64,000 nucleotides of DNA. Origin: Thalia democratica. Taxonomy: Eukaryota. This document shows, piece by piece, positions 721 to 50,028 of this stretch; the stretch's first letter is position 1; each line of letters opens with the position of its first letter. Under the pieces are notes generated by a model that saw only the letters and a list, made by a program, of their open reading frames with translations, ran no database searches and was not told the origin of the DNA. The stretch is taken from assembly GCA_965202585.1 (NCBI GenBank), contig OZ241829.1, forward strand, positions 29,636,001 to 29,700,000. Reading direction: 5' to 3'. The translations under genes and the position numbers were made by a program.

Positions 721-1307
721 CTAAGGTTTTACATAAAAGAAAACAGGAAGTAAACATTACGCTCTAATTTGATAAAAATACGCAACCGATTATAAAATTC
801 TTAAGTTTGAAAAATTAATTTTTTATACTCGCCAAAGTTTACATTACAAATTTTTAAAGCTTAAAATTGGTATTAAACTTATCATACATTAACGCTTGGC
901 TTAATTGATAAACTTGAGTTCTCAAGTTCTTTGTAGTGAAGTTAAGTAAAAACAAAACAAAGGTAAACTCTTATAATTTATTACTTTATGTACTACATGT
1001 AAAAAAGCATTTTATTAATTTGTTTTTGTTAAAATTAATCTTTCTAATTAAACAAAGTAAAAAAAAACATGCAGAACGGTTACAAAGTCACAGAAGACAC
1101 CCAAATACATGTGCCTTGACAGCATGGTGCACAGTTTGCATAAGTCATATTTAGGTAAAGTAACTTAATCAAATTTTGTTTTAAGAAAAGGTATAAAGAC
1201 TTTAAATAATTGATAAGTTAACTGAAAACGTTTAGTCGCCTTTAGTTTTAGGCTGGTGTCAGTAAAAAAATAAACAAATAACTTAATGAATGCTTTTAAG
1301 AAATAGT

Positions 1308-3597
1308 CTAGCAATGGAAAAGTTCAAATCGCAAGGTCCATTGTAGATGGTGTGTTACCAGAGTGATTCGAAAATATCTTGCAGTAACTGGCACTGGTAG
1401 CCTATTGATATGAGGCGTGTCATAGTCTTTATTTGCCATAAAAATCTACAAAATATTTACTTTAGTAAATTCACAAATACAAAATAATTAAGAAATTCTT
1501 GATAAAAACTAATTAATTTTTAACATACGTTTATTAAGTATGAATTAACCATTTATTTCATCAGTTTCAACAAAACGGGTTGTTAACCAGATTTCGAATT
1601 TTTAACAAACTATTTTCACCTCGTAATAAAAAAGTTGCATAGTACTAGGAGCAAAAACAATCAAATATTAGGTAAAGTAAAGTGGTTTATGAAAACTAAA
1701 GTTGTTTTTACGAATAAAAATAATCTCTTACCAATAAAAGTATATATCACCGTTTTAAGTCAAATTTTTTTTTAGTCATATCAAACCCAAAAACGTGTTG
1801 TAGCTGGTGTAGGTTAGTTTACATTTACAGTAAAAATCTTTTTGACTTAGTTATGTAAGTTAATTTGTCCTGGACAAGACGTTAAAGTGTATCCAAGTGG
1901 TGTGCGACTCGATAACCGAAATGTTTTTTCGTGCACTAGGTCCTAATATTTTGTGTGCTTTTTGTCGTTCAATAAACAATAATAATAGAAAGTTAAGCTA
2001 ATAAAAATAGTAAAAAGCGTTCAAATGTCACTGTTCTTCCAAAATTTTTGGTGAAAATATAAAAACATGCTTGCAATTTACATATCCAATTCCCTAATTT
2101 TAATGCTAAGTTATTTATGATTGCGTTTTAGGATTACACGATGTAGAAATGTTGATGGCAGTTCTCTAGAAATCTTTATGAAGAAATAGTATGAATAGAG
2201 GTATTTTTAGTAACTAAACTAAAACTTACAAATATTTTTTTGTGATGAAAAAAATAGGTGATACAATATTTTACTCGTTTTTATTCTTGCTATATTCAAT
2301 TTTAATTTTTTGTATGTCTGTTTAAATACTTAAGATAGTAAAAAAAAAGTTCATTTTAATAGGTTGACAACAAAGTATAAGTACATTAAGCAAGAAAACA
2401 AAATTGACGTTTTCTTAATAACAAGAATCTTCATTTAAAAAACAAAGTATCCTTTTTCTTGATTAAAAAATAAAATTAAAGAAATAATAAAACTGAAACT
2501 GGTTTAAAATATTTTTTATTCAAGACAATGCTGTAGAAATTTGAAGTATTCTTTTATAATTGGAATAAAAATATTTTTTAGGATTTCAAACACATATACC
2601 ATAAAAACTTGAATTAGTATTTTTTGATTTTACCGGGAATTAAAGATCATCTAAACTATTTTTTTTGTATTTTTGACATATTAAATGTCTTTTAGACATA
2701 AGCTGCTTTGATATCCCATCTTTTATATTCTACGAATAAACTTTTAACATATGCGCCAAATACTTATTTGATAAATTTAAAATTCTCTATGAAATTTAGA
2801 TAACGTTTGAAAAACTTTTAGTTTTGTTTGCAATAACGAACAAGTCAAAAAATAAATTCGACTAGATTTGAAAAAAACTAGAAAAGTAAGAACGTTTTAA
2901 ACTTACAACAATTTTTCCACTTCCGTCAACTACATTTTGTAATTCGTCTTCAGAGTTAGTTTTATACTGGCAAGAATAAGAAGTTGTATATGGATTTTTA
3001 CCTCTTCCCTGCGTTGCAACTTTGTGAATTGTTCTTTCTAATACAAGGTCTACTTGAATCCATTTCTCTTTTAGGGATGTTTTAAGTTAGTGAAAAAATG
3101 CATTGAAATATCACTAACAACTAATAAAAGCAGTGTTTACTTAAAAGAAGATAAAACATCACTAATATTATATTGAATGGTATATTTGTTCCCAGTTACA
3201 AAAAAACATAATTTCCAACGTTACATAGTAAATGCCGTAGCTTTTAAAGTTAAGTTTAAACCGTTTTTTAGAAAAATACTCAAATTCCGTATTGAATGTA
3301 GGTATTTAAAATATTTTCTTTTAGAACAAGTAGCCGTAAGTTTTTTTTTCGATCTAAAAGCACTGTATGAAAATCGAAAACCTGATTGAATGAGAAAAGT
3401 GCGCTAACCTGGAGCTCGATGAAAAATGGTCCAAGCGAATGGTTCAAATTCGAACAGTCGAGCAAACCGCGGACCAAACCTGCAGCTTTTTGGCGTTTCT
3501 TCGTAACAATCGTCGACATCGTCGTAAGCGTAACCGCTTGCAGTCACTTGGCTGTTGGTGATGGTGCCGCTGGTCATTCCCAAACCGCACGCGTCAA
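1308..3597 (-). CDS. F5/8 type C (discoidin/FA58C) domain, C-terminal, three exons
   Basis: 3409-3597 (CGLGMTSGTITNSQVTASG...GPRFARL...AW), 2907-3067 (EKWIQVDL..IHKVATQGR..YTTSY), 1308-1445 (IFMANKDYDTPHINRLPVPVTARYFRI...TLRFELFHC*). Confidence 0.93.
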
Positions 3598-6500
3598 CTG
3601 TGATTTTTGGTGTGAGTTCAGCTTTACTGGTTCAACTTAGAAACTGCTTGTTTTTAAAAGTTTAGCTTTTTTTGTCAAGGGCTCTGAGGTTTTATAGTTC
3701 ATGTGTGGTACAACGACAAGTTTTTTCTTGTAGCTCGTTTTAACAAGTGGAACTAAAGTGACTTGTTGTATAAAATTGAAATCACATAACATCACTCACG
3801 TAAAACGACTTAAACGCTTTGCAAAGCAAACCACATGGTTTCAAGTTGTCTACAATAACAAAACGTCTCTCAAAAGTACTGACGATACTAATTCTTACTT
3901 GATAATGAAATTTTTGAACATAAAAATATTAACCGACCTTCGGCCTTAACGGCGGCTCTGTCGCACCCCGGGGGGTTCACCCAATCTCCAAGCCCGGGAT
4001 TTTCTTCGGTCACATTGCACTGGGCAATTCCGCTGCTCACTGTTTTATCGCAAAACTTGGAGCTTTCGCAAACAAAGTCAAACTCCTCCGTGCTCACGTA
4101 CTTTCCCGGTACCACGACAGGATCTCTCGGTGTTAAAGTGTCCAAGCACAAGGAGTACTGCAAGTCCGGACACTCTGTCGCGTTAAATTTCAGCACACTT
4201 CAGTTGCCTGAGCGGACGCACAAAAATAGTTTGAAAACTAACGCATTAGATTAATGCCATAAAGCAGAAACGATTATAGCTGATACGTGTACAATAAACT
4301 TAAAATAAATACATTACACTATGTATTCTTTATTAGTGTTCCCTTTCTATTGTATTAATATTTTAATCTGACTTGAAAGTGTTAAATAAATATTTTTCTC
4401 CGTTTTACGTATGCCATAAACCATTAAAAACAGAAAACAAAGCAGCTAAGTCATTATCAACTTAAACTGAAACAAATGATATTGTTTTCATACCTTTCAC
4501 ACATTTAGGGGCCTCAGAACTACTCCATTGTCCGTCGTGGTCGCAAATGTTTATATTTGAAGAGCCTGGCCACACAACCAAGCCGTTTTTGCACCTGTAC
4601 TCGACTACAGTGTTGGTCAGCATTCTACCATCCGCTTCACTGCTAGAAATGACAAAAAAATCAGTTTCGTCGTTTTCTGGTAAATCTTGGCATTCTGTGT
4701 AAATAAGAGCTTTGATGAAAGCAGTTGTTAATAAAAAAACATATGTTGCAGATGTCTCTTACAGTTTTCAAACCGTGTAAAGTTTATAATTTGGATTTTA
4801 AAGAATATGCACAATTTTTAAATTTTTTGTTACTATAAACTAAAAGAAGGTTTTAAATAAAGAAGCAATTTTTTTTTTAAGTTTTATATTTAACAGCTTT
4901 GATATAATTAAAACTTTAGTTCTTAATATTTTTAAACTTATCAAGCCAAAGAACTTTTAGTTTTCAATTATATAACTTTAAAAGATAATTGACTATTAGG
5001 CTTTTTCGGTAAAAACTTAGACTATTTATTTTATTGAATTACAAAATAAAACTGTGCTTCGGTTGTCAAGTCTAAAAAAAGTGCTGCTTATAAAGCTTGC
5101 ACACAATAACAGACTAGCAAAACTTTAAGAGTGTAGCATAGACGTAAAATTTAAGAACTCAAACTCATTTGTTTAACACAGAAACTGTAGAAAAGTGAAA
5201 GGTTGTCTACCGTTTAATAGGATTTTCAATTAAAGAACACCTCTATTCAAAATTCAAAACATTGAACCTTTAAGGCAGGCTGCGCGGTCCTTCCACCCCA
5301 TCGTTGTGCACTCTATCCGTCCGGTGTCGGGCCGAGGTATGGCTCCCGGGTCGCACGTGAACTCGACGGTTTCGCCGTGCGTGTACTTCTGATCCGCGTC
5401 GAAATGGTACTTTCCGTTGTGGAAGTCAGGAAGCGGACTCAGACAATCTGTTCGAGTCACTCCATTCATTTATGCGAATAATTTACTTTTGTGTTATTGA
5501 GAACTTGAACTTTTATGATGGTTAGAATGATTTATTGTTTTTTTATAAATTTGTCAAAAAATAATACGTAGAGAAGTAGAGTTAAAATTTTATAATAAAG
5601 ATAATTTCGTTTAGATTAAAGATTGCTTTCCAAATATTTTAAATACAAAGCCTAATTGTTTTTATGCACATGCAAACATAAATGATTCTATACATCAATA
5701 AAAATACTTTCAAAGTATAATAAAACTTTTAATATTATAATTGATGGCATATACTACAGTTTTAGAAATATTAAGTAAAAATAAAAACATGCTTTTTTTT
5801 TTGTTTTTAACGCAAGTACAAAACACGTTTTTTTGATGTTTAAAAAAAAACATCTTTTTCTAAACCAAAAATTTACAAATGTTTTAATTTTATAACAAAC
5901 TGTGATATGTAAAGCAGACAAATTTATTATAATAGTAACAATTATATTAATAATCATTTTTCAAACTATTTTAAATCTCACATTAGTTCTAAACATATTT
6001 TATTTTTTTCTTTGCAAACTTACCTTAGTTATATGAAAAAAATATCTTAAAATGTATAATGTTGTTAATGAAATTACGCCATTTTCAGTTTGAAACCTAC
6101 CGTCGTATACAAAATTTTTGTCTATTACGAGAGCATTAAAGTTTCCATCGTATTTACATTCCGCCCAGCTCGGAACCGCAGCGTGTTCTGGAAATCTGCC
6201 AGTAAGTACAGCCCAAGATTCTGAGTTGCCTAAAAAAAACGATTTCACCAGGTTTGCCAGGAGTAATATTTTAAAAGGGCTTTTAAAAACCTGGAAATAG
6301 TGTGCAGTCTTTCAAACGATCAATACCGAGTCTTCTCATAGTGTCAAACACCGGACCATCAGTGTTAATATTTTTCTCTGCGGCTGCTTGCCCACGTACT
6401 GTCATCATGATAATGTCCCCGTAGCTTGAGTTATTTAATATAAAATCTGACATTCGTACAATCTGAAATTTAAGAACTAAATTGTATTTTGGTTTCTATG

Positions 6501-9500
6501 TCAAAAAGTGTAGATGATGTTTGGTATTTTTAGCATGTGTTTTCGTACAAGATGTTATAAAGTGTATAGTGTTAAACAATTATTAAATACTATTTTTCAG
6601 TTTAAAGCAAAAATTTTTTTTTCTAGCATGCTGTACAGAAGTTAGTACCTCATGTATTATTGTTATAACTTAGATTTCTAAATAATAAAAACTAAAATTA
6701 AGAAAGAGTAGTTTTTTTCTTATGGATTTGGATTTATGTAAATAATATAAAGTCTAAATACAATAAAGTTTATATAAAACCTTTCTAAAAATAAAAAACG
6801 GAAATTTCTGTTATACTTTTAGCTGCGTAATTACAAAAATATTTCTAGAGTTATTAAACAAAGCTTCAACTCAGCGTGGAATATCTTAAAGTTATTTTAC
6901 TGAATTAAATAAAAAAAGCTTCTAAAACAAAAACTCTAATTTTTGCTAAACCGTGCTTAAAGTCTGAAACAAAATTTATCAAAAAAAAAACTGTACATGT
7001 TCGTGACCCCGGACAGTGTCAAACTTCATCGATTGGGTAGTTCTAGTAATTGGATCGAGAATGGCAACGCCGATTCCTCTGGTTTCATCGCACAAATTGT
7101 TCCCACCCTTTTCAAACTTGATTACGCAATTCTGTCCCAAAGCATTCGTGTCATATCCTCGTGATAAGCCATAAGCATACAACTCAGCTGAAATTGAAGC
7201 ATTTAAACAGTTACGTTTCGCGTTTACGTTTTCTGCTTGTGCACGTATAACAGCTAGCTTACTTGGCTCGCAGACCGGGGGCTCAGTGTGATCCCAGGTA
7301 CCATCATCTTGACAGGTTATTTCTTCCGGATACGCGCCAGCCATTTCGTGAAACTTGTCGCACTCGTAGCTGTGCACAGTTGTTCCGGGTAACCAAACTT
7401 CATCGGCTGTTTCGTATGTAACTTGGTACTTCGAATAACCGGTTGTGGGTGGGTCTGGACAAACTGTGTTAAACAGCATGGTTTTAACGCTCTTTTTTGT
7501 TGAGTTTTGTAGACAAAACTTTGCTTAGTTTGAAGAATTTCAACTCATAGTTTTATAAAATCCTAAAATTTTTCATTTAAAAAAATTGTTTAAAGAGACG
7601 CTGGTTTTCGTTTGGTGTTAAGCTTTAAAAGTTATTTATTCTGGATAAGTTACTTTGTCCGATAAAATTGATATACACTGTTGAAATTTTGCGAAAATTA
7701 GGTACTTTTAATATTTTATCTTTATTATGAATACTTTTTTATGATTTTTGTTTGTTACCTACAAAATAAATATAAATAAAATAGAAGCAGATTATTTGTG
7801 TAAACAAACGTTAAGATTAAAACTATAAATTATTCATTATCACTTAAAGTTTAGTTACAAATGTAAAATTTAAGTTCAAGGAACAAACTATAAACACCTT
7901 AAGTTATAAAAGTCATTTAAGATTTTGACAATTGCTACATTTTTGATCTTTAAAGTATTTAGTTTTAATGCACAAACTAAGATGTTTTGATAGTGTCAAA
8001 AATTGTTTTAATAAAAATCTTAATACTCTGACTCGGCTATCTTGTTAATTAGAAACATATTTAAGTTCATTAAACGAAAATTAACTGTACTTAAGAACCT
8101 TATTGTTGTATAAACAAGCTTTCTAATTCAGCAAACGTCGTTCTTACTGAAATTCATGTGACTTACGCTTGGAACATTTAGCTTGCGCACCCCAACCGGT
8201 TTCTCCACACTCAATCACACCACTTTGTGGCCATGCTCCACTGTCGCATTTAAAACCAACGGTATCACCTTGAGCGTAGTTGCTTGAAAGTTCTTCGTCG
8301 TAGTCTCCGTTTGCAAATTCCGATGGCTTTGAACACGCTGTAATGATCAAACAGTTGAGGGTTTGAGCAAACAAAGTTTGCCAGCAGTTAAATACGACCT
8401 TTTATTTTTGAAAAAGTCAATGCAAGAAAGACGTAAATGTAAGTCCGTAGTAAATAACTTTAGATAATAAAAGTAAGATGTCATTTAAATCACCTTCAAT
8501 GAAAAAACAAACTAGTTAGGTCACTAACTTTACCTTAACATAAGACAGATAAGCAGTATGAAATATACAGAACTGACATATAGGTACACAAGTAGCCAAA
8601 TCTTCTGTTGACACGCTGAAGAGTCCACTTCCAAGGCACTCTGTAGAAAGTGCTTTAGAGTTTTCTCCGTGAGCAAAATACCCGGTATTGCATTCGTAAC
8701 TCAAAGTAGTTCCTTCCGTAACATACTTTTCAGGATTATTGAAAGTTCCGTCAACTATCTCTGGCGGATCATTACAAACTGAAATAATATTCAATAAGTT
8801 TTTAAGCTTTAATGACTAAAGACAAATTGATCATCAAATTAAAAACTAATGCTCTCCTCTTGATAATTTTTTTAATGCTTATTGTTTAATAAAGCTGAAC
8901 AAGTTATCAAAGTAAAACACAAAATTAAAACTGTATATGTTTCAGAAATTTATAATTTCTAAATCTACTTATTAAAATACTGTTTTAAAAAACTTAGCAT
9001 TCTTAGATTTCAATTTGCTTTTACATTACTACTGGCAGATTCTTACTAGTAGTCCCAAGTTGTGTTGCTGAAATTTGAATTACCTTACCTAACAGCTCTA
9101 AAACTTAAATGAAATAGTTTTTTTTATAATTATATTCAATTTCTTCTATACTGCTAAGAATTTATTAAGTAAGCCTATATAAATAGTATATCCATTTTAA
9201 AATTCAAATTTTATTTTCAAGATATGATTCATTTAAGTTTTTATAACAATTTGAATTGTAAGATTTCAAATGTCGAAATTTAACTGTCAAGTAATTTTAT
9301 TTACAATATAATACGAAAAATCTAACGCTTAGTTAAGTAAGTATTTATAGTTATGCCGCAAAAACTGATAAATCTTTAACTAAACCCATACTTAAAAATA
9401 AAAATCACTTAAAAAGTTCAAAGTTTGATAAAAGACTTATAAAACGCACAATTAAAGTTACCTAAGACTTGTAAATACATTTTAGTGGTAGTTTCGTTGT

Positions 9501-12500
9501 TACAAACTTTTATTTTTAATTTAACTAGATTTTAAGTATACCTCAATTATTGTTTAATTTAGTTACCTTATATTTATGTAAAATGATACAATCACTACGA
9601 TAGAAAAAGTGGTAATTTAAGTACAAAAACTTAATATTGGAACAATAATTAATTCTAAAAATTATATTCTGCAGAAAGCTTAGATAATATAATCTTATAA
9701 TCAATGTTTATAGATGTGAAATACCTCTAAACTTAGATACCTTAGTGTTGTATAAACTAACAAAAGTATTACAAGGAAAAAGTAAAAACAATTATGTTAA
9801 TACTTACTCTTTAAGCAACTCATTGGGTTGGCTGTGTCGAAAGGTGGTGAAAGTGCTCCATTTTGGCAAGTTCTTTTTGGCACATCGGTCGAAAGGGAAG
9901 CATACCCTTCTGAACAGTTGTAAGTTGTACTTTGGCCATGATTAATCGGCGCTGCTGGATATGGCTGAGAGTTCGTTACAGTATGAAAATCATTGCAATC
10001 TGAAATTATTTTAGTGCTTTGATCTTTAAATTTTTAAAGTTTTTTTCAATATTGTTATTTGTTTTTACTTGCTGACTTATATGTGCAATATTCTAAAGTG
10101 CATATTATATTAAGATAGTTTTTTACGGTAAGATGGCGGTACTGATTACATTTATGTAATGAATGTAATAGCTTTAGAAGTTTTCAATATAAAACTTTTG
10201 TTTTCAAATAAGTTTTAATTACTGTTAGGACTTTAATTACGTTCTGTTCTTTAAGTTACCAAAAGTTACAGTAAAACTTCATTTGAATCCGAAAAACTTT
10301 AGATTTTTAGACTATGAAAAACTTAACATTTTAGAAATATAAATTAAAACAAATTCCACTATGTTAGTGTTTTCAACTTACTTTGGTAACATATGACTTC
10401 AGTATCTGGATTGAGCTCGCCGTCATTACAAGTTCTAGTATCGTCCCCGGTCAGTGTGTAGTTTTCATTGCATATAAAAGTTACAGTTTCTGAAGAAATA
10501 TAAACCGTCCTACCGTCTTTAGTATCACCGTTCGCAGGCTTGGTTATTGTGCACTCTGTTTATAACAGTACTTTGGTTTTAAAGTTTGTAGCAAACAATA
10601 ATGCTTAAAAGCTATAATTTAAGATTTATATCAATTTTAATGAAATTTTGCAAGCCGAATTGAACTTCTAACAAACATGTTAAAACCTTTTTGTTTGATA
10701 AACTTGAATAAGTATAACTGAAGCTGAAACACTTTTATTAATTTTACAAAAAAAAAAACACAAAGAAGTTAAACAACCAAAAAATACTCTTATTTAAGTA
10801 CCTTGTAGTTGAAAACATGAAAGAGGTTATTTAAAAAGTACAATTGCTTAGTACTACAATACAATGCAAAACAAGTATGTAAATAAAAAGCTTATGTGCT
10901 AAAATTTTCAATTAAATAATAATTTCAATGTATATGATAAGTAAATTCAAAAAGTTATTAAGATAGAAGAAAGTTGAAGAATTTTATAACTCCTGCTTAA
11001 AAATAATTAGAATACTTAAGTTGTTTTAAACATCGTCCAATAGTATTTTTTTTCTTGATGGTTTGTATAACGAGTGTAGAACTTTAAAACAAACCTTAGC
11101 TAAATTGTATCATTTCTAACCTTAAGTATTTGATGTTTGAAAGTTATATTCTGCAGAAAACTTAAATAATAATTATTCTATAATCAATTTTATTAGATGT
11201 GAAACATCTCTAAATTTAGGTACCTTAGTGCTGTATAAACTAACAAAAGTACTAAAGGAAAAAATAAAAACAGTTATGTTAATACTTACTCTTTAAGCAA
11301 CTCATTGGGTTGGCTGTGTCGAAAGGTGGTGAAAGTGCTCCATTTTGGCAAGTTCTTTTTGGCACATCGGTCGAAAGGGAAGCATACCCTTCTGAACAGT
11401 TGTAAGTTGTACTTTGGCCATGATTAATCGGCGCTGCTGGATATGGCTGAGAGTTCGTTACAGTATGAAAATCATTGCAATCTGAAATTATTTTAGTGCT
11501 TTGATCTTTAAATTTTTAAAGTTTTTTTCAATATTGTTTTTTGTTTTTACTTGCTGACGTATATGTGCAATATTCTAAAGTGCATATTATATTAGGATAA
11601 TTTTTTACGGTAAGATGGCGGTACTGATTACATTTATGTAATGAATGTAATAGCTTTAGAAGTTGTCAATATAAAACTTGTGTATTCAAATAAGTTTTAA
11701 TTACTGTTAGGACTTTAATTACGTTCTGTTCTTTAAGTTACCAAAAGTTACAGTAAAACTTCATTTGAATCCGAAAAACTTTAGATTTTTAGACTATGAA
11801 AAACTTAACATTTTAGAAATATAAATTAAAACAAATTCCACTATGTTAGTGTTTTCAACTTACTTTGGTAACATATGACTTCAGTATCTGGATTGAGCTC
11901 GCCGTCATTACAAGTTCTAGTATCGTCCCCGGTCAGTGTGTAGTTTTCATTGCATTCAAAAGTTACAGTTTCTGAAGAAATATAAACCGTCCTACCGTCT
12001 TTAGTATCACCGTTCGCAGGCTTGGTTATTGTGCACTCTGTTTATAACAGTACTTTGGTTTTAAAGTTTGTAGCAAACAATAATGCTTAAAAGCTATAAT
12101 TTAAGATTTATATCAATTTTAATGAAATTTTGCAAGCCGAATTGAACTTCTAACAAACATGTTAAAACCTTTTTGTTTGATAAACTTGAATAAGTATAAC
12201 TGAAGCTGAAACACTTTTATTAATTTTACAAAAAAAAAAACACAAAGAAGTTAAAAAACCAAAAAATACTCTTATTTAAGTACCTTGTAGTTGAAAACAT
12301 GAAAGAGGTTATTTAAAAAGTACAATTGCTTAGTACTACAATACAATGCAAAACAAGTATGTAAATAAAAAGCTTATGTGCTAAAATTTTCAATTAAATA
12401 ATAATTTCAATGTACATGATAAGTAAATTCAAAAAGTTATTAAGATAAAAGAAAGTTGAAGAATTTTATAACTCCTGCTTAAAAATAATTAGAATACTTA

Positions 12501-38631: not shown

Positions 38632-38651
38632 TTTTACTAACTTTTCTTGTT
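38580..38651 (-). CDS. Putative first coding (signal-peptide) exon of the CCP gene
   Basis: Acceptor ttgcag at 38652-38653, ATG at 38631, hydrophobic VVSIVWQFIM, and a perfect GTAAGT donor in phase 1. Confidence 0.5.
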
Positions 38652-40540: not shown

Positions 40541-42839
40541 CAGTGGCGTCGCGTGGTATTTTTTTTAGGTGGTGCAGAATTTAAAAAAAAATCCCATTTT
40601 TTAAAACTCTTTTTTTATCTAAAATAAAGAACTTTTTCTACAACAATTACATTAAATTGCTAATGTAACTTGGGAAATTTTGTTTAAAAATAAAACATTT
40701 ATTAAAAAAAAAAAAATATTTAAGAAAATAATTTTTTACAGATTTTAAAAATTCAATATATTTTTTTAGATATAGCTGGTCAAAGTCAAAGGCAATAAAA
40801 GGTTCCTTATGGGAGGCACAAACTAAAACAGCGCTTAAAAAAAATGTTTTACCCCCCCCCCCCCCCCCCCCTTTTATGCCCTTAAAATCTACTTTAGAAT
40901 TATTTGACTGAAATTATTTTATAAAGTTTTAATTTAACTACAACTCATCTTTTATCAATATAAAAAAATCATATTAACTTTTGGGATATGGTAACTCACA
41001 GTCAGAGGTACAAAGGAATCCTTATTAATATAATATAAACTCAAACAAGTAATAAATCAAATCACTAAAATCATGTCTTTTTTTTTTATAAGATGGCCTC
41101 AAAATCTTTAGATGTTTCTTTTATAAAAAAAACAAATTGCTGAAATAGATATTTGAAACACTAAGAAAAAAAAAGTTATAACAAAAGTTTTTTTTTGTAT
41201 ATATAAAAATATATATTGATACTTAAAAATTTAAAATTTCTCTTCAACAAAAGTAAACAAATTTTATAAAACTTAGGATGAAAAAGTTTGATAAAAACTG
41301 CTTTAAGAATGATGGAGAATATAGGTTTTCAGTAAAATTATATTCTTTTGCTGTTTTGATTTGCTCCTTATATAATAAATCATTGTACTCTCTGGCTTTG
41401 ACCGGTTGTAACTAAAAGTTTAATTGGAAATTTCAAGTTTATTAAAGAGTAACTTTTAGCTTTTTGAAAAAGTTAAAATAAGAACAACATGTAAAAAAGT
41501 GCCTATAAACCTCCCCCCCCTTACCCCTCACTACTTTGCACTTATTTTTTTACAAACATTAAGACTTTTATTAACTTTTTTTCTAATTTTAATGTTTTTT
41601 TTTGGAGGTTTAAAATTCAATAGTTTAAAAGGGTATCTTTTCTTTATTTAATTTTAATATGTTTTTCATTTTGATGACAGTATTTTTCTCAGGAGCTCAA
41701 TTTTTTTAAGTTTAGTTGGTGAGGCTGTTGAACTTTTAAAGAATTTTAAAGATAATTTATAAATTAGTAACCCTTATAGCAGTAAAAAATTGCTTAGTTA
41801 GTTTTCATGTGGCCATAGGGGTAAAACACTTATTTTTTAATTTTAGATAAGCTTGTTATTTTCAGAGTAAAAAACTAAAACTGCTTTAGTCAGCCTGAAT
41901 ATTTTTATAATTTGGTCTGTTTTAATTTATCTTGGGTCATCTTGAGTTTTTAACATTTCTAAGTTATCCTGATTATGAGGCAAGGCAACCATGTTTCAAC
42001 AATTTTATCTAAAACTTTTGCTTTGTTTATGAAAAAATTAAACCAAAAGTCATATAAAGTAGACTAAATTTTCCTAAAATGTTAAACTACTCTAAGTAAT
42101 CAAAGTTTCTAAGTTAAGGCTATTTACTTAATTTAAATATGTGACTGTTTCAATAATACTAGTTTTCATTTAATATAAGTCTAAATTATTTTTCTAGTGA
42201 ACTAGAAGTTAATAATAAACTTCTTTTTTTTTTTCAGAACTTAAACTTTACATTTAAATATAATTTAATTAAATATTTTATTAATTTTATGATAACAATA
42301 ACAATTATAATTAAGTTTATGTATGCAGATTAAAATAAAAAATCAAATTTCTTAGACTTTAGTGATTTAAGGTTCTTATCTTTTTTTTTTTCAAAATATT
42401 TAATTCATGACAAGTTTTGTTCTTTTATTGTCCAGTTTTAATAGAAGTGATCTGTTAAATTTAAAAAAACCATGTGGGTATATAAACTAAGTTTAATCCT
42501 TTGCAGTAGCTTAGCTTTGTTTTTATTTTATGTTTACAATAGCTTGTAGATGACACTTAAGCATGTCCTGTTTTAGGGAATTTTCAACTTAGTTTACTTA
42601 CCGCAAGATATTGATTTTGCGGTAATTCTTGAAGAAATTTTGCTTTTTTGAGTTCATTTGCGGCAGTCAGCTAAGAGTTTGCGGCAGTGAAGTGGGCAAA
42701 ATGGTCGTTTTCAAAATTGGAGTTTTAAAAGAGATTTCGTTCTAAAACATAACGAAAACGCTACAGATACTTTTTTTTTTCTTACAAAATTTCAAGGTAG
42801 TGCAGTTGCGGCAGTGCAACACCCCACGCGACGCCCCTG
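40541..42839. mobile_element. Non-autonomous hAT-type DNA transposon (2299 bp)
   Basis: TIRs CAGTGGCGTCGCGTGG / CCACGCGACGCCCCTG; 8-bp TSD ATTCATAC at 40533-40540 and 40840+2000=42840-42847; internal poly-C at 40852-40871; no transposase ORF. Confidence 0.9.
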
Positions 42840-43208
42840 ATTCATACTATTTACTTTTTAAACTTTGTAGAAAAAATTTGATTCTCAAACTAAAAACTAA
42901 AAGTGGTTTAAATTATATTTTGTGTAACAAATCTGAGTGTTTATATATTGCTTGCAACTTGAGTTTGATTGTGATTCTAATTTCTATCAAAAATAAATCG
43001 AAGGTTAAAAAAAAACAAGAAAAAATTAAGTTTTAAAAATAAAATTTTAATAAAATTTTGTATTTATTTAAGTTTAATAATAGTTCTTTCAAATAAATTA
43101 ATATTATTTAGTAAAATTAATACGGAAAAAGCGGTTAATTAGTATTTGAAAAAGTACACTTTGATACATTTCATGATTCTTTTTGTCAATAAAATTCGGT
43201 AAAAAAAC

Positions 43209-46200
43209 TTAAGGAAGGCTGAAAGCTTTTTTTATGAAAGGATTGTCTCTGTGTCTTCGCACAAAATCCGGACGTTTTCTTTCTGTGAAAAAATAAAAAA
43301 ATCGTTATTAACTCACGTCTTTAAACGAGCACAAATTCAATCTGACCGTTGTATTCCAAATCACCAGTGAACTGCACGTCGTTTTGGTACTGGTGGTTGA
43401 AGTACTCGAACCTTTCGAGCGTGAACTCGTCGGCCGCCACAGTTTCCTTCTTGTATTCTTTGAACGACAGCTCGAACTTTGCCTTCACTCCGCTCGGGTT
43501 GTAAACTCCTTAAAAATACACGTGAGATGTGCAGGTATAAAGAAATGCAGTGACGAGGTTTTAAAAAGCTCAAAAAATAAAATGCAGCAGGGACACCAAT
43601 AGCGTATCTGCTTTAAGAGATCTTAATCTAAAAAATGAATGGGGTTAAAAAATTATAAAAAAGCTATGATACTGTTTAAACGAATAAGAAAACTAATCTT
43701 AAAGATATAAAGATTTTTATCATTGTGTTAGTGTATAATAAAACTGTAAATTACTTTATTAAACACAAAAAAAATAAACAGAAAAACTTGATGTGCGTAG
43801 CAAAAAATAGTTCAGTTTAGTTTATTTCGGTTTTATAAATTAATTCATAATTAGTTCAAATACAAAACTACTATTAAAAAAAAGTCTAATAACTCTGAAA
43901 TAAGTGTGAATAGGCAACATTTTTTATCAAAAGTAAGTAAATATAAGCTGTAATAATTAATATTACTTTTATAATTATAACTAAACTTTTAAAAACTAAA
44001 ATGTTCTCAAAACGGTAAGGTACGCATTTCACGTAAAGTACACACTTTTATATGGTTTCTTGGTGCGTACCCTACCAATGTCATTACTTTATTCGTTTTT
44101 AGATAAATACAAAATACAACCATGAGCTTTGTGACTAGTTTTTTTTTCAAAGCTGGTATTAATTGTTTCCAAACTTCTCGTGAAACCAACCGAACTTAAT
44201 GTAAGGAACTCTCCCTTGCGCGTTTGCCCCGATAATAACCGGCAACTGATAATCGAGGTAAGAAGATTGCAGCTTGCCGTTAACTTTCAACTTCATTAAA
44301 CCGTTCCACGTTCGGATACCGGGGTCTCCAGTGCGACCGAGACGTTCCATTTCCTAGTTTAACTTTTAGCTATCATTTTAATGCTTGATGATAAACTTTA
44401 AACATTTTAATCTTCCTACTAGCTTAAGCTACTAGTATATAATTTCTCGTTAATTAGAAACTCTATAGACTTTATCTTATTTTATTAAAAAACAGGTCTA
44501 AAGTTCTTGTAAAAAACTTTCAATAATATTTTAATACAATTTGTTGCTTGTTTTTCATTTAAGTGACTGCACCTGAAATATCTAATACTTTATAAATTTC
44601 TAAGCTAGTTAAATTAAGTAAAAAAAAATCAAATAACTTCATCTGTAAGGAGACCGTACTCGCCCCAATTTATAATCCACTCAAATTCAGTCCATTCCTG
44701 CTCTTCGAGAACATCTAGCGGAATTTCGTGAAGAATAATCGCCTAAAAAAAAGAAAAAATAAAGAAAATATTTTTAGAAATAATAAAGAAATATCTTTTT
44801 AGCGTTTTATGTTGAAAATAAAGTTTGAAACTAAGTTGAATTTCTTTTCGTTAGAACTTTTTAGAAAAACTTAACTCTAAATGGAAACAAGTCTGTCAAT
44901 TTTAAATTTGCCCAGATATTATTATTTTACACAATAAACCCTTTTTTTTTGTTCTGATAAGATAAACTAGCAAAATGTTATGTAAGCTTAACTTTTAGTA
45001 TAATATTTTAAAAACAAAGTGATAAAACAACGTGTTGTTCGGCCCGACCGTCTTCAACGCACACAACTTTTTTCATCCCACTCATTCGGCACTTTCCTTC
45101 AGTTTTGAAGTACCTTTCGTCCGATCTTGCTGTCACTGTCAGCTTGCCTGCAAGAGCAGTTTGTTGTAATTTAATTTTTACACGCTAGCCTAAAACAATA
45201 AAAATAAATTGTTTACCAAAAAATTAAGCAGTGGTATGCTGTTCTATATAATTGTACACTTTTAAAAATGTTTCAAAAATCACATTATTACTAGTTTCAG
45301 CATCAAAACATTTTCGTAATTTACCTTACATTAAGTTGTTTTGTAACGATATGTATATTCTGTTGTTTTTTTAAATGACCGCCTAGGGGCGTTAGATGAT
45401 TGTTTATCAAATCACATAATAAAACTTTAATAGTTTTTGTTTTTACGCTCAGTTAGCCATAAGACCGTGCGGAGGGCACACCAAATTTAAGACTTTGAGA
45501 CACCAATTGAACTTAAGAACTTTTTAATGATGTTCATTTTATAAGAACTTTATTTTATTTGTATTATTTTGTTGCATTGTGCTTAGTTTAGTCATCGTTG
45601 TGCATGAAGTACGACATATATTAAAACTCTGTATTACAAGTAAAACCTATTTTTGTATTTAAGATTGTGACATTCAGACAGTTTTAGAACGTTATTAAGA
45701 ACATTTTTAGTTGTAGAATTTTGTGTCTACTTGTTGTGTTTATTTTCCCAGTTGTATTCTACTGATATAGTAGCTGCTCTATCACTTCTACTTTCTAGTT
45801 TCCATATTAATATTACTTTTTCAATAAACTCACTTCATTAAAGAAACTATACATATTAAGTTTATTACATATTTAATAGTTACTAAGTTAAACCTAATGA
45901 GTAAGGTAAATTCAGTAAAAGCCTCAAGAGCTAATCACTCAAAGCGTTCAGCTCAAAAAAGGGGACTTCCCCCAATTAAAAATAGTTCCTACCACTGGTT
46001 TAAGGCTACAGTTTTACAAACAGAGTCATAGCTTATTTCGTATATAACTTCGTACACGTAAAAATCTAAAAATTGCAAACTAATTTCTATATTACATATC
46101 ATTTCAAACAACTAACTCTTGTTCCTGTCGTAATGAACTGAAAGAAGGGGGTGTCCCCCTCTCTGAAAGCTTATTCGCTGCCCTCCCGCTTCGAAACCTG

Positions 46201-49200
46201 AACGCGTAGAATAATAATCAAATTAATCTGATTAACTTTTGTAGTTTCCTTAAAAGTTAACGTTTAGTATTTAATTTAGTATTAATACTAATAAACAGTT
46301 TCATACACTATTTCAAAGATAAATTAAACACTTGTAAATAGACTTGAACATGGAGGCGATCACCACAAAAAAAATAGAAAAAAATCACCAACCGGCCGCG
46401 TGCTCGCACGGGAAATGGGAGCATCCCCTGAACAGCTCCTCATTGGTCAGCCGTATCGGAACGGGGTCTTCCCCCACGGTGATGACGCGAGGGTCGGGCG
46501 AGTTGTGCCACTGAGTGATCATCACCCGCCGCATGGCCGCTCCGGCCTCACCCGATTGGACGAGGTCTCTCAGTTTCATCTTGTACTTGTACACGTGGCT
46601 GGCGTGTCGCGTCATCGGCTCGTTGGCCGCCGGGCACAGCGTTTGGAGGAGGGGCGGCATGACCGGGTCTGTGTGACGTAATAACGCTTGGGGTGATAAT
46701 GTGTGACGTAAAATTTGTGTGGTAAGAATGGGTGATGTCTGATGAACAAACGAGTTTGATAAAATTTTGTTAACTTTAAATGACAGTGAAAATCTATATT
46801 GAAGATTGCTAATTTTTTTGTAACTGGTAGCAGGTGTGTTAAACATTGATTTTTTCATAATATTTAGTCAATACTTTTCTTGAAGTTTTGGAACTATTTG
46901 TTAGAATTTTAAGCAGTTTATTAAACTTATATCTTTTAATCATTTCTGCAATAAATCCAGTGAAAAATTTGATGAAATAGTTGTGAATAAAAACGTTTAG
47001 AGATGAGATTGTAGAAGTATAACGACATATTTTCATACAAAAATTTTTCTAAACTTTAGCTTTTAAAACAGTTACAGCTAATGAAAAGTACATTAAAATA
47101 AAACTTAGATAAACACTTTAATATTGAAAATTATTTCTCTATATCAATGGTCTTCAAGGCGTGCACATTTAGGTTAATTTGCTGTATATAAAAAAGTTAC
47201 AATGGTTAAAAAAAAATGCAAATGACGTTTTTTGTTTTTTTCTATGGGAAAAAGTTAATGATAACACAAACTAACAGTTTTTAGCACGTTATTCATATAT
47301 TCTATCTCATAAAACCAAAATAAATTCTTGTTCTTGATAACAACTTACATTTTAATAGTCTAGTTTGCAAATAATTTATTTTTCAGTAATTTAGTGTGCA
47401 CAGTGTTTGAAAATATTAAAAACCAATGCTCTAGAGTCATTAAATGTTTACTTGACAACAACAAAAATTAAAAAGCTAAAATTGTTTTAAGGTATTAAAA
47501 ATAAATTGAGAAGGTTTATTTAAAAGTTTTTAAACATTCAGTTTATAGTAGACGTTTTCTGATACTGTCGAAGTATCTGTTGAAAATAAAATAAATAATT
47601 TTAAAACAAAAAATACTTTTTATAAGGAAATTGTTGTTTATATCATTGTTAGTGACGTTTTCTTTGAAATATTTTTCAGTTACAAAACACGTGCTGATCT
47701 CTATCCTGGACTTTTCATCTTTTTTTTTATTATCCAAGTTGTCGTATACAAACCTAAAATAAATATGAAACTTTGCTTTTTTTACTCTAGTCGTTTAGCA
47801 GTCAAAAACCGCTTACGTTTTTATTGAATTTTATATATCAACAAAACAAGTTTAAGCACAATAACTTTTTAAACAACTTTAAAATATTTGTATGATACCA
47901 CGTTAGTTAATTTTATAAAATTTTGGTTCTAAAACCTTTGAACATTTAATAGCTGTAAAAATGTCTACTCTTTTAAAGAGAAACAACATGAACAGCAACC
48001 AGTGAATTAAAGTTTTTACACACTACTACAATAGTTCTAGACATACTAATATAAACTAAGTTGAAAATAGTTATAATGTTTACAGTTTTTAGTTTTATAG
48101 GCTAAAAATGAGAAAACTTGCACTTATAATCTATTCAGGTATAAGATATTTAAAACAAATGACGAAGTACCTGTACTGATAGGAAGGTTCACTGTTTTCA
48201 TTTATGGGAAAATACTTTTCAATGTAAAATTTTGTCTTTTTACTGTTTGAAATTTTCAGTAAAACAAAATTACCTGGAAGAACCTGTTCTGTAAGTACAT
48301 TAAATTTTTTTTTTTTGAAGAAACGTTCTTAGCTTTTTTGTTTTTTACGCCAAGTAATAAGTACACTTTATTTACAATCAGTAACATAATTTTTGATAAA
48401 AGTTTTAAAATGCAATAATTGTAAAACATTTCTATAACTACATACGAAAATCCTACAAAGTTATCTCTTAGTTTCTGATTTACTTCAAACCTTCCCTGAC
48501 CAGTTTCAAGAACGGTCTCGATTTCGGCCACTTGTTGCAAGTGAAATTCGATGAGGCCGCCTTGAGACCGGTGCAGTCCCATATTTCACCAGATTTAGTT
48601 TTATTTCTCAACAGTTTAATACCTGTTTGCAAGGATTAGTAGATTAACTTTAAAAGAAAGCTAAAAAAAAACGTAAGTCAAATTAAAAGCGATCCTAGCT
48701 GTTTTTGTTTTAGAAAGATGGCTACTGTACGACTGGATAACCAATAACTGTGGTGTGAAACTCGATAACTAAAAGGTTTCTTCATACACCAGGTGCTTAA
48801 ACCAGACTTTTTGGACGCTTTTTTTTTTATCGTTTTATAACCAATATATACACACTGCCGTAGGGGATGTTCAACATCACTGGTTAAAAATATATACTAC
48901 GGTCATCTAAAATGAATGCTGTAACAAATTAAACCTTATTTATAAATAAAAATTTTATATGTAAACAAAGTTGAGAACCTTAACAAAATATTTAACATTA
49001 AAAGAGTTTAGTTTGGGTTTTTGACATAAAGCAAGTTAAAAGAATATTCAATTTGTTTTTTACTTCTAACACAAAAGTACTACTTAAGTTTAAAAACCCT
49101 TTTATTAAAGTTTGTGTTAAACGCATACTGTGATTAAACTACTTTTACTTCTAAAGTAATATGCAATGGTCTTTTGTACAACTCTCTTCCTGAAACTTTG

Positions 49201-50028
49201 TTAACAAATGTAAAAAATAGTAACAGTTACCACATAAAATTTTTGCATGCAAAACAAACAAACTGACTGCAACTCAACCCATCTCCTTGGAAACCAGGGT
49301 TGCACATACACTTGTAATACTCCTTATTCTCGTAGTTGTATTTCAAGCAGTAAGCATCTGCGTGACAAAACTGACAAACGTCTTTTTCAAATCCTGTATT
49401 TTAACAAATTCCCACGTGATGTCATTTTGATTATAATTTATTTTTGTACAGACAACAGATGTTTTTTTTTTTGAAAAAAAAGTTAAATTGACAATAGTTG
49501 TATTGAAGCATTAATTCTTTTTTTATTGTAACTTACTTTTTTGACAACATGTTTTACCAAATCTAAAAACAGTAACGAGTATAAATTTCTGGTTTTAAGA
49601 TGTTGACATTTCAGAAAACATGAGTTATAATTTAGTAATTGTTCAGTAGCTTTGTAAATTTTGACACTAAACAACTGTATAATAATAAATATTAAAAAAA
49701 TACATAATTTGTGTTACATTAGTGTGCTACATAAACAGTTATTGTAAAGTTATTGCAAGTTTAAATTAGTTGTTGTGTAAAGTTTTCGTAAACATATTAA
49801 CTGAACTAACTTAGTTTTTTAATTTTATTTCATAAATGTATGCTGTTTAAGGTTTATGTAAATACTTCAGTAATACTATAAAACTTATTATGCTTAAATA
49901 AATATATTACACAAAAAAGCAAAGAACTACTAGTTATTTTAAATCCTTTGGTTTCGTCATTTAAGCAAAAACCATCGACTTCATAGGTTTCACACTTGTC
50001 TTCTCTACCACCAAAAGCTAGGGTTGAA
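43209..50028 (-). CDS. Spliced gene: EGF-like domain + heparin lyase I (heparinase I, PL13)-like domain; 5' start exon not located
   Basis: Phase-consistent GT-AG exons: 49931-50028 (tentative), 49268-49393 (EGF), 48491-48622, 48171-48288, 47617-47753, 46393-46668, 46117-46197, 45032-45147, 44638-44742, 44191-44353, 43347-43508, 43209-43282 (stop TAA). The joined translation contains EPSYQYRF..KSRIEIS, VMITQWHNSPDPRV, FQRGGHPLL, TARSDERYF, IPLDVLEEQEWTEFEWIINWGEYG and VIIGANAQGRVPYIKFGVYNPSG. These are colinear with heparinase I motifs as I recall them (KPSYRF, KGRTELS, IFAQWHG, EQGGYPTL, KANSDRQW, CWITFDVAIDWTKYG, ILIGRNDDDGYYFKFGIYR). Confidence 0.85.
43347..44353 (-). CDS. Two lyase exons forming the YxKFG/VY catalytic-Tyr motif
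   Basis: 44191-44353 (EMERLG...IIGANAQGRVPYIKF-G) is spliced in phase 1 to 43347-43508 (GVYNPSGVKAKFELSFKEYKKETV...); the intron interrupts the KFG|VY motif. Confidence 0.85.
44638..44742 (-). CDS. Lyase exon with the WxxFxxxIxWxxYG motif
   Basis: AIILHEIPLDVLEEQEWTEFEWIINWGEYGLLTDE; 105 nt, phase 0-0. Confidence 0.85.
46393..46668 (-). CDS. Lyase exon carrying the QWH catalytic-His motif
   Basis: PVMPPLLQTLCPAANEPMTRHASHVYKYKMKLRDLVQSGEAGAAMRRVMITQWHNSPDPRVITVGEDPVPIRLTNEELFRGCSHFPCEHAA; 276 nt, phase 1-1; matches ORF 46385..46858. Confidence 0.9.
49268..49393 (-). CDS. EGF-like domain exon (phase 1-1)
   Basis: FEKDVCQFCHADAYCLKYNYENKEYYKCMCNPGFQGDGLSC: six Cys with the CxCxxGFxGDGxxC EGF signature; 126 nt with AG/GT flanks. 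Confidence 0.85.
49931..50028 (-). CDS. Putative N-terminal exon of the lyase gene
   Basis: STLAFGGREDKCETYEVDGFCLNDETKGFKIT; polypyrimidine AG acceptor; phase 2-1 end compatible with the EGF exon. The upstream ATG exon was not found. Confidence 0.5.

What the first reader, a model, noticed from the sequence alone, without database searches (positions are those of the whole stretch)
1308..50028. Lyase gene and giant CCP gene form a co-oriented block that is duplicated together - possible glycan-recognition/processing system
Seen: the lyase gene ends ~4.6 kb upstream of the CCP gene on the same strand. Copy 2 of the CCP gene ends ~4.3 kb upstream of the lyase, and window positions 1-1300 equal the lyase-upstream region, which implies another lyase copy to the left. 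The repeating unit therefore looks like [lyase + CCP-ILEI-FA58C]. Established: CCP arrays such as factor H and C4BP bind heparin/polyanions, and discoidin and POMGnT1-type ILEI domains can bind carbohydrate. Inference: the two genes may act together on sulfated glycans (innate immunity, extracellular coat or adhesive remodelling) and may be co-transcribed. The acceptor just before the CCP gene's ATG (38652) would fit SL trans-splicing of an operon if the host is a tunicate.
Basis: partly seen in the sequence, partly recalled or inferred. Interest (0 to 1): 0.7.

Follow-up and report, generated by a model that had tools for sequence, protein, structure and literature searches.

The report
Lyase plus giant sushi-repeat gene pair
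A heparin-lyase-like gene and the giant "sushi"-repeat gene behind it really are copied together, three times in a row and once more at an old second locus, but nothing shows that they form an operon or work together.

Summary
The block is real. On the minus strand, an EGF plus heparin-lyase-I-like gene (50017->43209) lies 4.6 kb upstream of a giant CCP...FA58C gene (38631->1308). This pair forms exactly three head-to-tail units (window -273 to 147967).

Depths in independent DNA runs fit two identical lyase copies plus one diverged copy.

The predicted lyase to the left of the window does not exist.

The history looks mechanical: an older tandem duplication, then a recent unequal crossover inside the CCP gene's own 1482-bp exon array.

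The right breakpoint falls at the acceptor of the first recognisable lyase exon. The only signal-peptide-like first exon lies outside the repeat, upstream of copy C alone.

New here: a diverged paralogous block (C5:17.94-17.97 Mb, copied again at 26.3-26.4 Mb) keeps the same order, with 5 lyase and 14 CCP exons collinear at 32-53% identity. The linkage is therefore old.

An SL operon is unlikely. The spacers are 2.3-17 kb and one holds a young 2.3-kb transposon. About 30 related CCP genes have no lyase neighbour.

No RNA data exist for this locus, so co-function and a lyase-CCP fusion transcript remain open. Earlier notes of this scan had already reported the three copies.

The parts
1..1307 (.). 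3' flank of CCP1. This is the beginning ('a' end) of the repeat unit, which starts 273 bp left of the window. It corresponds to 50013-50690 plus 53435-54380.
   Evidence: Self-BLAST and flank BLAST.
1308..38651 (-). CCP1 gene. Exon 1 is 38651-38580 (ATG 38631, phase-1 donor GTAAGT). Exon 2 starts at 37564 with a phase-1 acceptor one residue before the first Cys. The stop is at 1310-1308. At least 31 CCP-type exons were recognised.
   Evidence: ORF maps, Pfam Sushi hits and a home-made CCP HMM. pN/pS between copies is 0.16-0.38 with no stops.
1311..3086 (-). F5/8 type C (discoidin) domain exons at 2865-3086 and 1311-1445.
   Evidence: PF00754, E 2.5e-7 (profile positions 34-82) and 4.2e-6 (positions 87-127).
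6003..6495 (-). About 24 paralogous loci exist in this genome. The family assignment was not reproduced here.
   Evidence: No Pfam or PDB hit on the exon pieces. Paralogues are listed.
9658..24289 (-). Array of ten 1482-bp two-exon CCP cassettes. There are 10 in CCP2 and 6 in CCP3. It is the substrate of the recent unequal crossover.
38652..43208 (.). Lyase-to-CCP spacer.
40534..42853 (.). A 2.3-kb dispersed repeat (young transposon) inserted in the spacer of units 1 and 2 and absent from unit 3.
   Evidence: More than 40 genomic copies at 94-97% identity. The indel boundaries are 40535/42838.
43209..50017 (-). Lyase A, an EGF plus heparin-lyase-I-like gene. Exons: X1 50017-49931, X2 about 49382-49263 (EGF), X3 about 48585-48442, X4 46686-46393 (QWH), X5 about 46198-46121, X6 about 45181-45020, X7 about 44742-44653, X8 about 44353-44174, X9 43509-43347/43321. 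A possible tail exon is 43282-43209.
   Evidence: ORF and GC maps and splice sites. EGF_3, E 1.2e-6. A vs C pN/pS is 0.15 with no stops.
46393..46686 (-). Lyase exon carrying the Q-W-H motif.
   Evidence: A profile of this exon plus three relatives hits PDB heparin lyase I (3IMN, 3ILR, 3IKW, 9GRW), E 3e-4, residues 126-182, with the QWH aligned.
43345..43347 (-). Phase-1 G|GT near the end of X9, 8 codons before the TAA at 43323-43321. Its position is conserved in the old paralogue.
50013..50016 (.). Tandem-duplication junction (end of one unit | start of the next), 1-5 nt upstream of lyase exon X1.
   Evidence: Contigs of the DNA runs end here.
50017..54380 (.). Region between the CCP2 stop and lyase A. 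It is mostly very high-copy repeats, including a 2.74-kb insertion (50691-53434) that the left-most copy lacks.
   Evidence: summed depths 4e4-8e5 here, against about 200 in the lyase.
54381..64000 (-). 3' part of CCP2, which runs off the window. It is a chimera: its 3' half is 99.9% identical to CCP3 and its 5' half 99.7% identical to CCP1.

Best explanation
These are two adjacent, co-oriented genes for extracellular-type proteins. One encodes an EGF module plus a heparin-lyase-I-like domain. The other encodes a giant CCP rod ending in a discoidin domain. They form an old linked pair that has been copied as a block by ordinary segmental duplication. Shown: an ancient block duplication produced two lineages that both keep the order lyase -> CCP gene. 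One is the window type. The other is a membrane-helix plus Thr-rich-stalk lyase type at C5:17.95 Mb and 26.3-26.4 Mb. In the window lineage, a 45-50-kb segment was duplicated in tandem. Its right breakpoint sits at the acceptor of lyase exon X1 and its left breakpoint 1.6 kb past the CCP stop. Later, an unequal crossover between the 1482-bp exon arrays of the two CCP genes added a third unit, giving CCP1, chimeric CCP2 and CCP3, with lyases A = B and a diverged C. Both genes stay under purifying selection. Inferred: the two genes are transcribed separately. The CCP gene has its own short ATG exon, as the roughly 30 lyase-less relatives of this CCP family must have. The pair is not an SL-resolved operon. 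Whether the proteins cooperate on a glycan is unknown. Lyases A and B lack the signal-peptide-like first exon that copy C has, so they either use an unrecognised upstream exon or are 5'-truncated copies kept similar by gene conversion.
For: There are three full copies each of the lyase and the CCP 3' end, alternating on one chromosome, and the array is exactly 3.00 units, -273 to 147967. Identity is mosaic: [22949-62029] = [76153-115096] at 99.7-99.9%, while CCP1 3' vs CCP2 3' is 97.7%, CCP2 5' vs CCP3 5' is 97.6%, and lyase B vs C is 94.2%. That is the pattern expected from a crossover inside the arrays. Independent DNA runs show about 2:1 depth of A/B-type over C-type variants. pN/pS is 0.15 for the lyase (18 synonymous and 10 non-synonymous changes) and 0.16-0.38 for the CCP exons, with no stop codons. 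Five lyase and 14 CCP exons are collinear with C5:17.94-17.966 Mb at 32-53% identity. The same paired exons, with the same 5.8-kb internal spacing, lie downstream of the lyase paralogues at 26.36 and 26.44 Mb. The spacer is 4.6 kb with a young TE in units 1-2 and 2.3 kb in unit 3, whereas Ciona operon genes abut with under 100 bp between them (PMC2760879). Homologues of the first CCP exon occur at about 30 loci, most of them far from any lyase exon. A short CCP+FA58C paralogue on C2 has no lyase exon within its 25 kb of upstream sequence fetched. The QWH-exon profile hits heparin lyase I structures at E 3e-4.
Against: No RNA evidence exists for this locus, so the separate transcription units are inferred. 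The proposed CCP exon 1 encodes a poor signal peptide (MQCTSCNVVSIVWQFIM-L|C, with no small residues at -3/-1). I found no constrained counterpart of it in the paralogous lineage. Lyase exon X9 ends with a phase-1 G|GT at a conserved position in both lineages, and CCP exon 2 has a phase-1 acceptor, so an in-frame lyase-CCP splice is possible. Retention of the pair in two old lineages hints at more than chance adjacency. Lyases A and B appear to lack a start exon yet show no decay.
Confidence: 0.6

Rival explanations
1. The pair is one long transcription unit. Lyase exon X9 splices from its phase-1 donor across the 5.8-kb spacer to CCP exon 2. The product is a signal peptide-EGF-lyase-[CCP]n-FA58C giant, possibly made alongside a short soluble lyase that uses the read-through stop or the tail exon. 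The pair stays together because it is a single gene.
For: A phase-1 G|GT lies 54-55 residues into X9 in both ancient lineages. The codons behind it evolve faster than the exon: 5 of 10 tail residues differ between the 17.95 and 26.36 Mb copies, against 5 of 55 exon residues. CCP exon 2 starts with a phase-1 acceptor one residue before Cys1 in both lineages, and the join gives Val in both. The order has been collinear since an old duplication. CCP exon 1 is a weak signal peptide, and the only comparable ATG exon in the paralogue evolves neutrally.
Against: The X9 donors are weak (GTCAGA, GTTATA). An in-frame stop follows within 8-11 codons. Phase 1-1 exons are generic for CCP genes, so frame compatibility is expected by chance. 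About 30 relatives with the same first CCP exon have no lyase upstream and must have their own start exons. Exon 1 with its ATG and GTAAGT donor is identical in units 1 and 3. There is no RNA evidence.
Confidence: 0.2
2. The pair is an SL trans-spliced operon. Lyase and CCP gene are co-transcribed, and the CCP mRNA is released by SL addition at the AG at 38653-38652.
For: The genes share a strand. An AG lies 20 nt before the ATG. Tunicates use SL trans-splicing (PMC2760879).
Against: Known tunicate operons have abutting genes, operationally under 100 bp apart. Here the spacer is 2.3-4.6 kb, tolerates a young 2.3-kb transposon, and is 7-17 kb in the paralogues. The tract before the AG is A-rich rather than pyrimidine-rich. 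An AG near an ATG is not diagnostic.
Confidence: 0.04
3. The tandem triplication is an assembly artefact, caused by haplotypes or collapsed repeats laid side by side.
For: Units 1 and 2 are 99.7-99.9% identical over 39 kb.
Against: The 214 kb examined contain no gaps. Three runs from two studies show the diverged C-type lyase at about half the depth of the A/B type, plus the unit-1-specific joint 50688->53435. The identity mosaic fits a crossover, not haplotype stacking.
Confidence: 0.04
4. The two are separate genes but a true functional module. The lyase trims a sulfated or uronic-acid glycan that the CCP-discoidin rod binds or protects, and shared regulation keeps them linked.
For: The pair is retained in two old lineages although the lyase N-terminus changed from signal peptide-EGF to membrane helix plus stalk. 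Both genes are under purifying selection. Both are extracellular-type proteins.
Against: There is no expression or binding data. Most CCP relatives and at least four other lyase lineages (C4, C5:61.3 Mb, C7, C1) showed no partner among the scored hits. Adjacent genes stay adjacent after block duplication by default.
Confidence: 0.25

Closest known systems
Unequal crossover in repeat-bearing CCP genes (human CR1 long homologous repeats in the RCA cluster; LPA kringle IV-2 arrays)
   Same: Near-identical internal exon cassettes (1482 bp; 10, 10 and 6 copies) act as recombination substrates. They change protein length and here generated a whole extra gene unit with a chimeric middle gene.
   Different: Here the crossover was between arrays of two neighbouring paralogous genes, so it also duplicated the intervening lyase gene. 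The comparison with CR1 and LPA rests on general knowledge and was not tested here.
Ciona/Oikopleura SL-resolved operons
   Same: Same-strand neighbours in a tunicate, with an AG shortly before the downstream ATG.
   Different: Operon genes abut (under 100 bp; PMC2760879). This pair is separated by 2.3-17 kb that includes transposons.
Bacteroides/Pedobacter heparin lyase I (PL13; PDB 3IMN, 3ILR, 3IKW, 9GRW)
   Same: The QWH exon aligns to residues 126-182, including the Gln-x-His of the active site. The paralogues give weak PF14099 hits over profile positions 127-192.
   Different: The gene is split by introns, preceded by an EGF module and followed by an extra C-terminal exon. No exon piece reaches the Pfam cut-off. 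Activity is unknown.
Bacterial polysaccharide-utilisation loci (a lyase next to glycan-binding proteins)
   Same: A glycan-cleaving-type gene is kept next to a gene with carbohydrate-binding-type modules.
   Different: These are eukaryotic, intron-rich and separately spaced genes. There is no evidence of co-regulation. This is an analogy only.

Membership tests
Polysaccharide lyase family 13 (heparin lyase I) | Significant sequence similarity to the PL13 beta-jelly-roll | tested here: met
   A profile of the QWH exon (4 sequences) gives heparin lyase I as the five best PDB hits, E 3e-4 to 0.018. This covers one exon only.
Polysaccharide lyase family 13 (heparin lyase I) | Pfam PF14099 above its gathering score | tested here: not met
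No exon piece of the window gene hits PF14099. The whole-genome scan gives only sub-threshold hits at paralogues, 24 bits against a cut-off of 29.9.
Polysaccharide lyase family 13 (heparin lyase I) | Catalytic Gln/His (QWH) and Tyr present | tested here: inconclusive
   QWH aligns with the enzyme's QWH. The Tyr in 'YIKFGWF' of exon X8 was seen by eye only.
Polysaccharide lyase family 13 (heparin lyase I) | Lyase activity on heparin/heparan sulfate | not testable with these tools
   This needs recombinant protein.
Tunicate SL-resolved operon | Genes abut or are under 100 bp apart on one strand | tested here: not met
   The spacer is 4.6 kb (units 1-2) or 2.3 kb (unit 3). The criterion comes from PMC2760879.
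Tunicate SL-resolved operon | SL leader on the downstream mRNA and a polycistronic precursor | not testable with these tools
   No RNA run holds the locus.
Tandem segmental duplication with non-allelic crossover | Head-to-tail units with shared junctions, unique flanks and an identity mosaic that switches inside internal repeats | tested here: met
.
CCP (sushi) / discoidin extracellular proteins | Sushi and F5/8 type C domains | tested here: met
   PF00084 on many exons and PF00754 on two exons.
   No Pfam, PDB or Atlas hit on the exon pieces. The pieces are short.
Conserved functional gene pair | The same order and orientation kept in independently evolving lineages | tested here: met
   Two old lineages within this genome. 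Other species could not be examined.
Conserved functional gene pair | Co-expression or physical/biochemical interaction | not testable with these tools
   No RNA data.

The most novel reading that the evidence does not exclude
The lyase and the CCP rod are an obligate module: either one spliced giant protein or a co-regulated pair. In it, a bacterial-type glycosaminoglycan lyase acquired by tunicates is tethered to, or works with, a sushi rod tipped by a discoidin domain. This arrangement has been kept since before the split of the signal-peptide-EGF and membrane-anchored lyase lineages, and it is being amplified by recombination.
Probability: 0.2. Interest if true: 0.75.

Novelty: new variant of a known kind. 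Interest (0 to 1): 0.5.

Why it matters
If the linkage is functional, it would be an animal-built glycan-processing module assembled around a lyase type otherwise known from bacteria, and a rare old conserved gene pair in a fast-rearranging tunicate genome. Even if it is not, the locus is a clean worked example. It shows how an internal exon array in one gene can drive duplication of neighbouring genes, and how a duplication breakpoint can strip a gene of its first exon. In both cases the claim is directly testable with long-read cDNA.

Tried and rejected
1. A whole-library protein search with the QWH exon gave only two true relatives. Both are exon-sized fragments on Tara Oceans contigs of 0.7-1.1 kb with no context. 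The three large hits were biased bacterial repeat proteins. Cross-species synteny could therefore not be tested.
2. Single-exon searches of PDB and Pfam for the other lyase exons and for the 'ILEI' exons found nothing. The Atlas look-ups were uninformative.
3. The RNA run search found only DNA-type contig runs. I used read laying to validate the duplication instead.
4. The query did not recover even its own window position, let alone the other two CCP copies, so I ignored it.
As a result, the lyase loci on C4, C7, C1 and C5:61.3 Mb were judged only from the coordinates of scored hits, which are lower bounds.
6. The 7 kb directly downstream of the 26.36 Mb lyase holds no CCP exon. The CCP gene there starts about 17 kb downstream.
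7. I looked for a start exon for lyases A and B in 50017-54380. Only AT-rich chance ORFs inside high-copy repeats turned up.
8. I looked for a start exon for the paralogous CCP gene. The best candidate (MKCKVC...) differs by three non-synonymous changes between the two copies and looks neutral.
9. Exons were never joined into a spliced protein for any search or fold. No full-length domain scan or structure prediction was made.
Full report
LAYOUT. The window is G000:C5:29636001-29700000, AT-rich eukaryotic DNA (GC 24-39%) without long ORFs. Earlier notes of this scan call the organism a pelagic tunicate. All the genes discussed lie on the minus strand.
- CCP1. It starts with a short exon: an AG at 38653-38652, the ATG at 38631, and a phase-1 donor GTAAGT after 38580. 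It continues from 37564 through dozens of sushi exons (PF00084). It contains an array of ten 1482-bp two-exon cassettes at 9658-24289. It ends in an F5/8 type C domain (PF00754 on exons 2865-3086 and 1311-1445), with the stop at 1310-1308.
- Lyase A. It occupies 50017-43209. It has a small Cys-containing exon X1, an EGF exon (EGF_3, E 1.2e-6) and seven further GC-rich exons.
- CCP2. Its 3' end begins at 54381 and the gene runs off the window.

IS IT A LYASE? Single exons give nothing in Pfam or PDB. The genome-wide PF14099 scan rings only weakly, and only at paralogous loci. I aligned the QWH exon (46394-46684) with a paralogue on C1 and two Tara Oceans fragments found by the whole-library search. 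That profile gives heparin lyase I structures as its five best PDB hits (E 3e-4), and the enzyme's Q-W-H aligns with the exon's. The other exons resemble heparinase I by eye only. Earlier notes of the scan reached the same family assignment independently.

THE DUPLICATION. DNA searches of the whole assembly find exactly three full lyase copies: window 43209-50028, 96401-103219 (100% identical) and 141170-147966 (95%). They also find three copies of the CCP 3' part, at 1308, 54381 and 107447. I fetched 40 kb to the left and 110 kb to the right and compared everything.
- The array is exactly three units: -273..50012, 50013..103203 and 103204..147967.
- Both flanks are unique. A kinase-like gene lies to the left and a CYP4-like gene to the right.
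- No sushi exon occurs outside the three genes.
- There is therefore no lyase to the left of the window.

HOW THE DUPLICATION AROSE. Identity along the units is a mosaic.
- [22949-62029] equals [76153-115096] at 99.7-99.9%. This stretch covers the 5' half of CCP1, the spacer, lyase A, the junction and the 3' part of CCP2.
- CCP1-3' vs CCP2-3' is 97.7%. CCP2-5' vs CCP3-5' is 97.6%. Lyase B vs C is 94.2%.
- This is the pattern expected if an older two-unit array underwent an unequal crossover between the 1482-bp arrays of its two CCP genes. The products would be CCP1, a chimeric CCP2 and CCP3, with lyases A = B and C.
- Cassette numbers are 10, 10 and 6.
- The recent co-duplication of the lyase is therefore a mechanical by-product of the CCP gene's internal repeats.

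IS THE DUPLICATION REAL? No RNA run holds the locus. I laid contigs of three DNA-type runs from two studies on 47800-53700.
- Over 49633-49815 each of two runs has one contig identical to A/B and one with 12 differences (the C type). The depths are 129.8 vs 59.6 and 94.3 vs 45.1, about 2:1.
- The form without the 2.74-kb insertion (joint 50688->53435), which is the left-most copy, is present in all three runs.
- Contigs stop at 50001-50016. Beyond that the sequence is very high-copy repeat.
- The triplication is therefore real.

WHERE THE BREAKPOINT FALLS. Exon X1 begins at an acceptor in every copy: CCCTAG| at 50017 in A and B, and TTTTAG| at the homologous place in C, both phase 1. It has no in-frame ATG and cannot be extended upstream to one. 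Homology between A and C ends at 50016, 1-5 nt from that acceptor.
- Upstream of C, in unique single-copy DNA, lies a good first exon: MNFFFSLLFLCLLFSKTN-G, window coordinates 148931-148877 (L013:4877-4931), with a phase-1 GTGAGT donor.
- A and B have no copy of it. The 4.3 kb upstream of them is the repeat-rich 3' flank of the preceding CCP gene, and I found only chance-like ORFs there.
- Even so, A and C differ by 18 synonymous and 10 non-synonymous changes (pS 0.065, pN 0.0096, ratio 0.15), with no stops.
- A and B therefore either use an exon I cannot see or are 5'-truncated copies kept alike by gene conversion. The 5' half of the gene is 98-99% identical between A and C, introns included.
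- The CCP copies also look functional (pN/pS 0.16-0.38, no stops).

OPERON? The spacer is 4.6 kb in units 1 and 2. Half of it (40534-42853) is a dispersed 2.3-kb element with more than 40 genomic copies at 94-97% identity. It is missing from unit 3, where the spacer is 2.3 kb. In Ciona, operon genes abut without intergenic DNA, and operons were defined operationally by spacers under 100 bp (PMC2760879). The AG 20 nt before the ATG follows an A-rich tract and is not diagnostic. I rate the SL-operon reading at about 4%.

AN OLD SECOND COPY OF THE PAIR. The QWH exon has 12 loci in the genome. A Sushi family scan and two searches with CCP1 exons placed hits just downstream, on the same strand, of the lyase paralogues at C5:17.96, 26.36 and 26.44 Mb.
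- I fetched C5:17940001-17966000. It holds a membrane-helix plus Thr-rich ORF, lyase exons, and 7.2 kb further on a CCP gene.
- Five lyase exons (X4, X6-X9) and 14 consecutive CCP exons match the window unit in strict order at 32-53% amino-acid identity.
- The 26.36 and 26.44 Mb loci are about 95% nucleotide copies of that type. Their first CCP exons lie about 17 kb downstream of the lyase and have the same 5.8-kb internal spacing. No CCP exon lies in the first 7 kb.
- The lyase-CCP order therefore predates the split of two lyase architectures. That type has since been copied as a block as well.
- The first CCP exon has homologues at about 30 loci, many of them closer to CCP1 (45-52%) than the lyase-linked ones (35-37%), and none of these lies near a lyase exon.
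- A short CCP+FA58C paralogue on C2 has no lyase exon within its 25 kb of upstream sequence fetched.
- The lyase lineages on C4, C7, C1 and C5:61.3 Mb showed no CCP neighbour among the scored hits. That is a lower bound, because I could not fetch those loci.
- Linkage is therefore old in one sub-lineage, but it is not a rule for either family.

ONE GENE OR TWO? Lyase exon X9 carries a phase-1 G|GT 54 residues into the exon (43347|43346), eight codons before the TAA. The paralogue has one 55 residues in. Between the two paralogous copies, the ten codons behind it change five times, against five changes in the 55 exon residues. CCP exon 2 starts with a phase-1 acceptor one residue before Cys1 in both lineages, and a join would read Val-Cys in both. 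CCP exon 1 encodes a weak signal peptide. The only comparable ATG exon in the paralogue evolves neutrally. These points keep a lyase-CCP fusion transcript alive, at about 20%.
Four points argue against it:
- The donors are weak.
- Phase 1-1 exons are generic for CCP genes.
- The many lyase-less relatives must have start exons of their own.
- Exon 1 is identical in units 1 and 3.
Only cDNA can decide.

VERDICT. The operon mechanism is unlikely, and the functional coupling is untested. The paper library yielded no report of a PL13-type lyase in an animal. Earlier notes of this scan had already described the lyase genes and the three tandem pairs. What this report adds:
- the exact unit boundaries;
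- the crossover history;
- the first exon lying outside the repeat;
- the validation with independent DNA runs;
- the transposon in the spacer;
- the ancient collinear paralogous block.

Noticed in passing
window 45342-46010: A dispersed repeat of about 660 bp sits inside a lyase intron. It has at least 40 copies genome-wide at 79-85% identity.
   Followed up: no
window 46669-46700, compared with L012/L013 (copy C): Copy C carries a 30-nt tandem duplication (10 codons, LSPKALLRHT) at the 5' edge of the QWH exon. It probably lies just inside or at the acceptor.
   Followed up: no
L013-L014 (window coordinates about 151990-157613, minus strand): A cytochrome P450 (CYP4-like) gene lies directly upstream of the array. 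Its motifs include FAGHDTNAMALSW and PFSAG.
   Followed up: no
L001-L002 (window coordinates about -39400 to -25700, minus strand): A MAP-kinase-like protein kinase gene lies in the left flank.
   Followed up: no
L031:16-1161 (C5:17940016-17941161): The paralogous CCP gene has its own homogenised array of 296-bp CCP exon units. At least four near-identical copies lie at the edge of the fetched DNA.
   Followed up: no
L016, L017 (Tara Oceans metagenome contigs): Exon-sized relatives of the QWH exon (33-41% identity) occur on 0.7-1.1-kb marine metagenome contigs. They presumably come from other pelagic tunicates. One gives a weak PF14099 hit.
   Followed up: partly
L022-L023 (C2:25395395-25400707, plus strand): This is a compact relative of the CCP gene's 3' end: a few CCPs, the Cys-rich module and FA58C, at 51-69% amino-acid identity. 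It has no ILEI-like exons and no lyase exon within its 25 kb of upstream sequence fetched.
   Followed up: partly
window 43282-43317: A strong GTGAGT donor lies 6 nt after the lyase TAA, and a strong acceptor lies 34 nt further on. Together they delimit a very short possible intron. With the upstream G|GT donor, this acceptor would add a basic 24-residue tail. That tail is not conserved in the paralogous lineage.
   Followed up: partly
C5:29886350-29910782 (window coordinates about 250-275 kb, plus strand): Another CCP-family gene cluster lies about 100 kb to the right of the array on the opposite strand.
   Followed up: no
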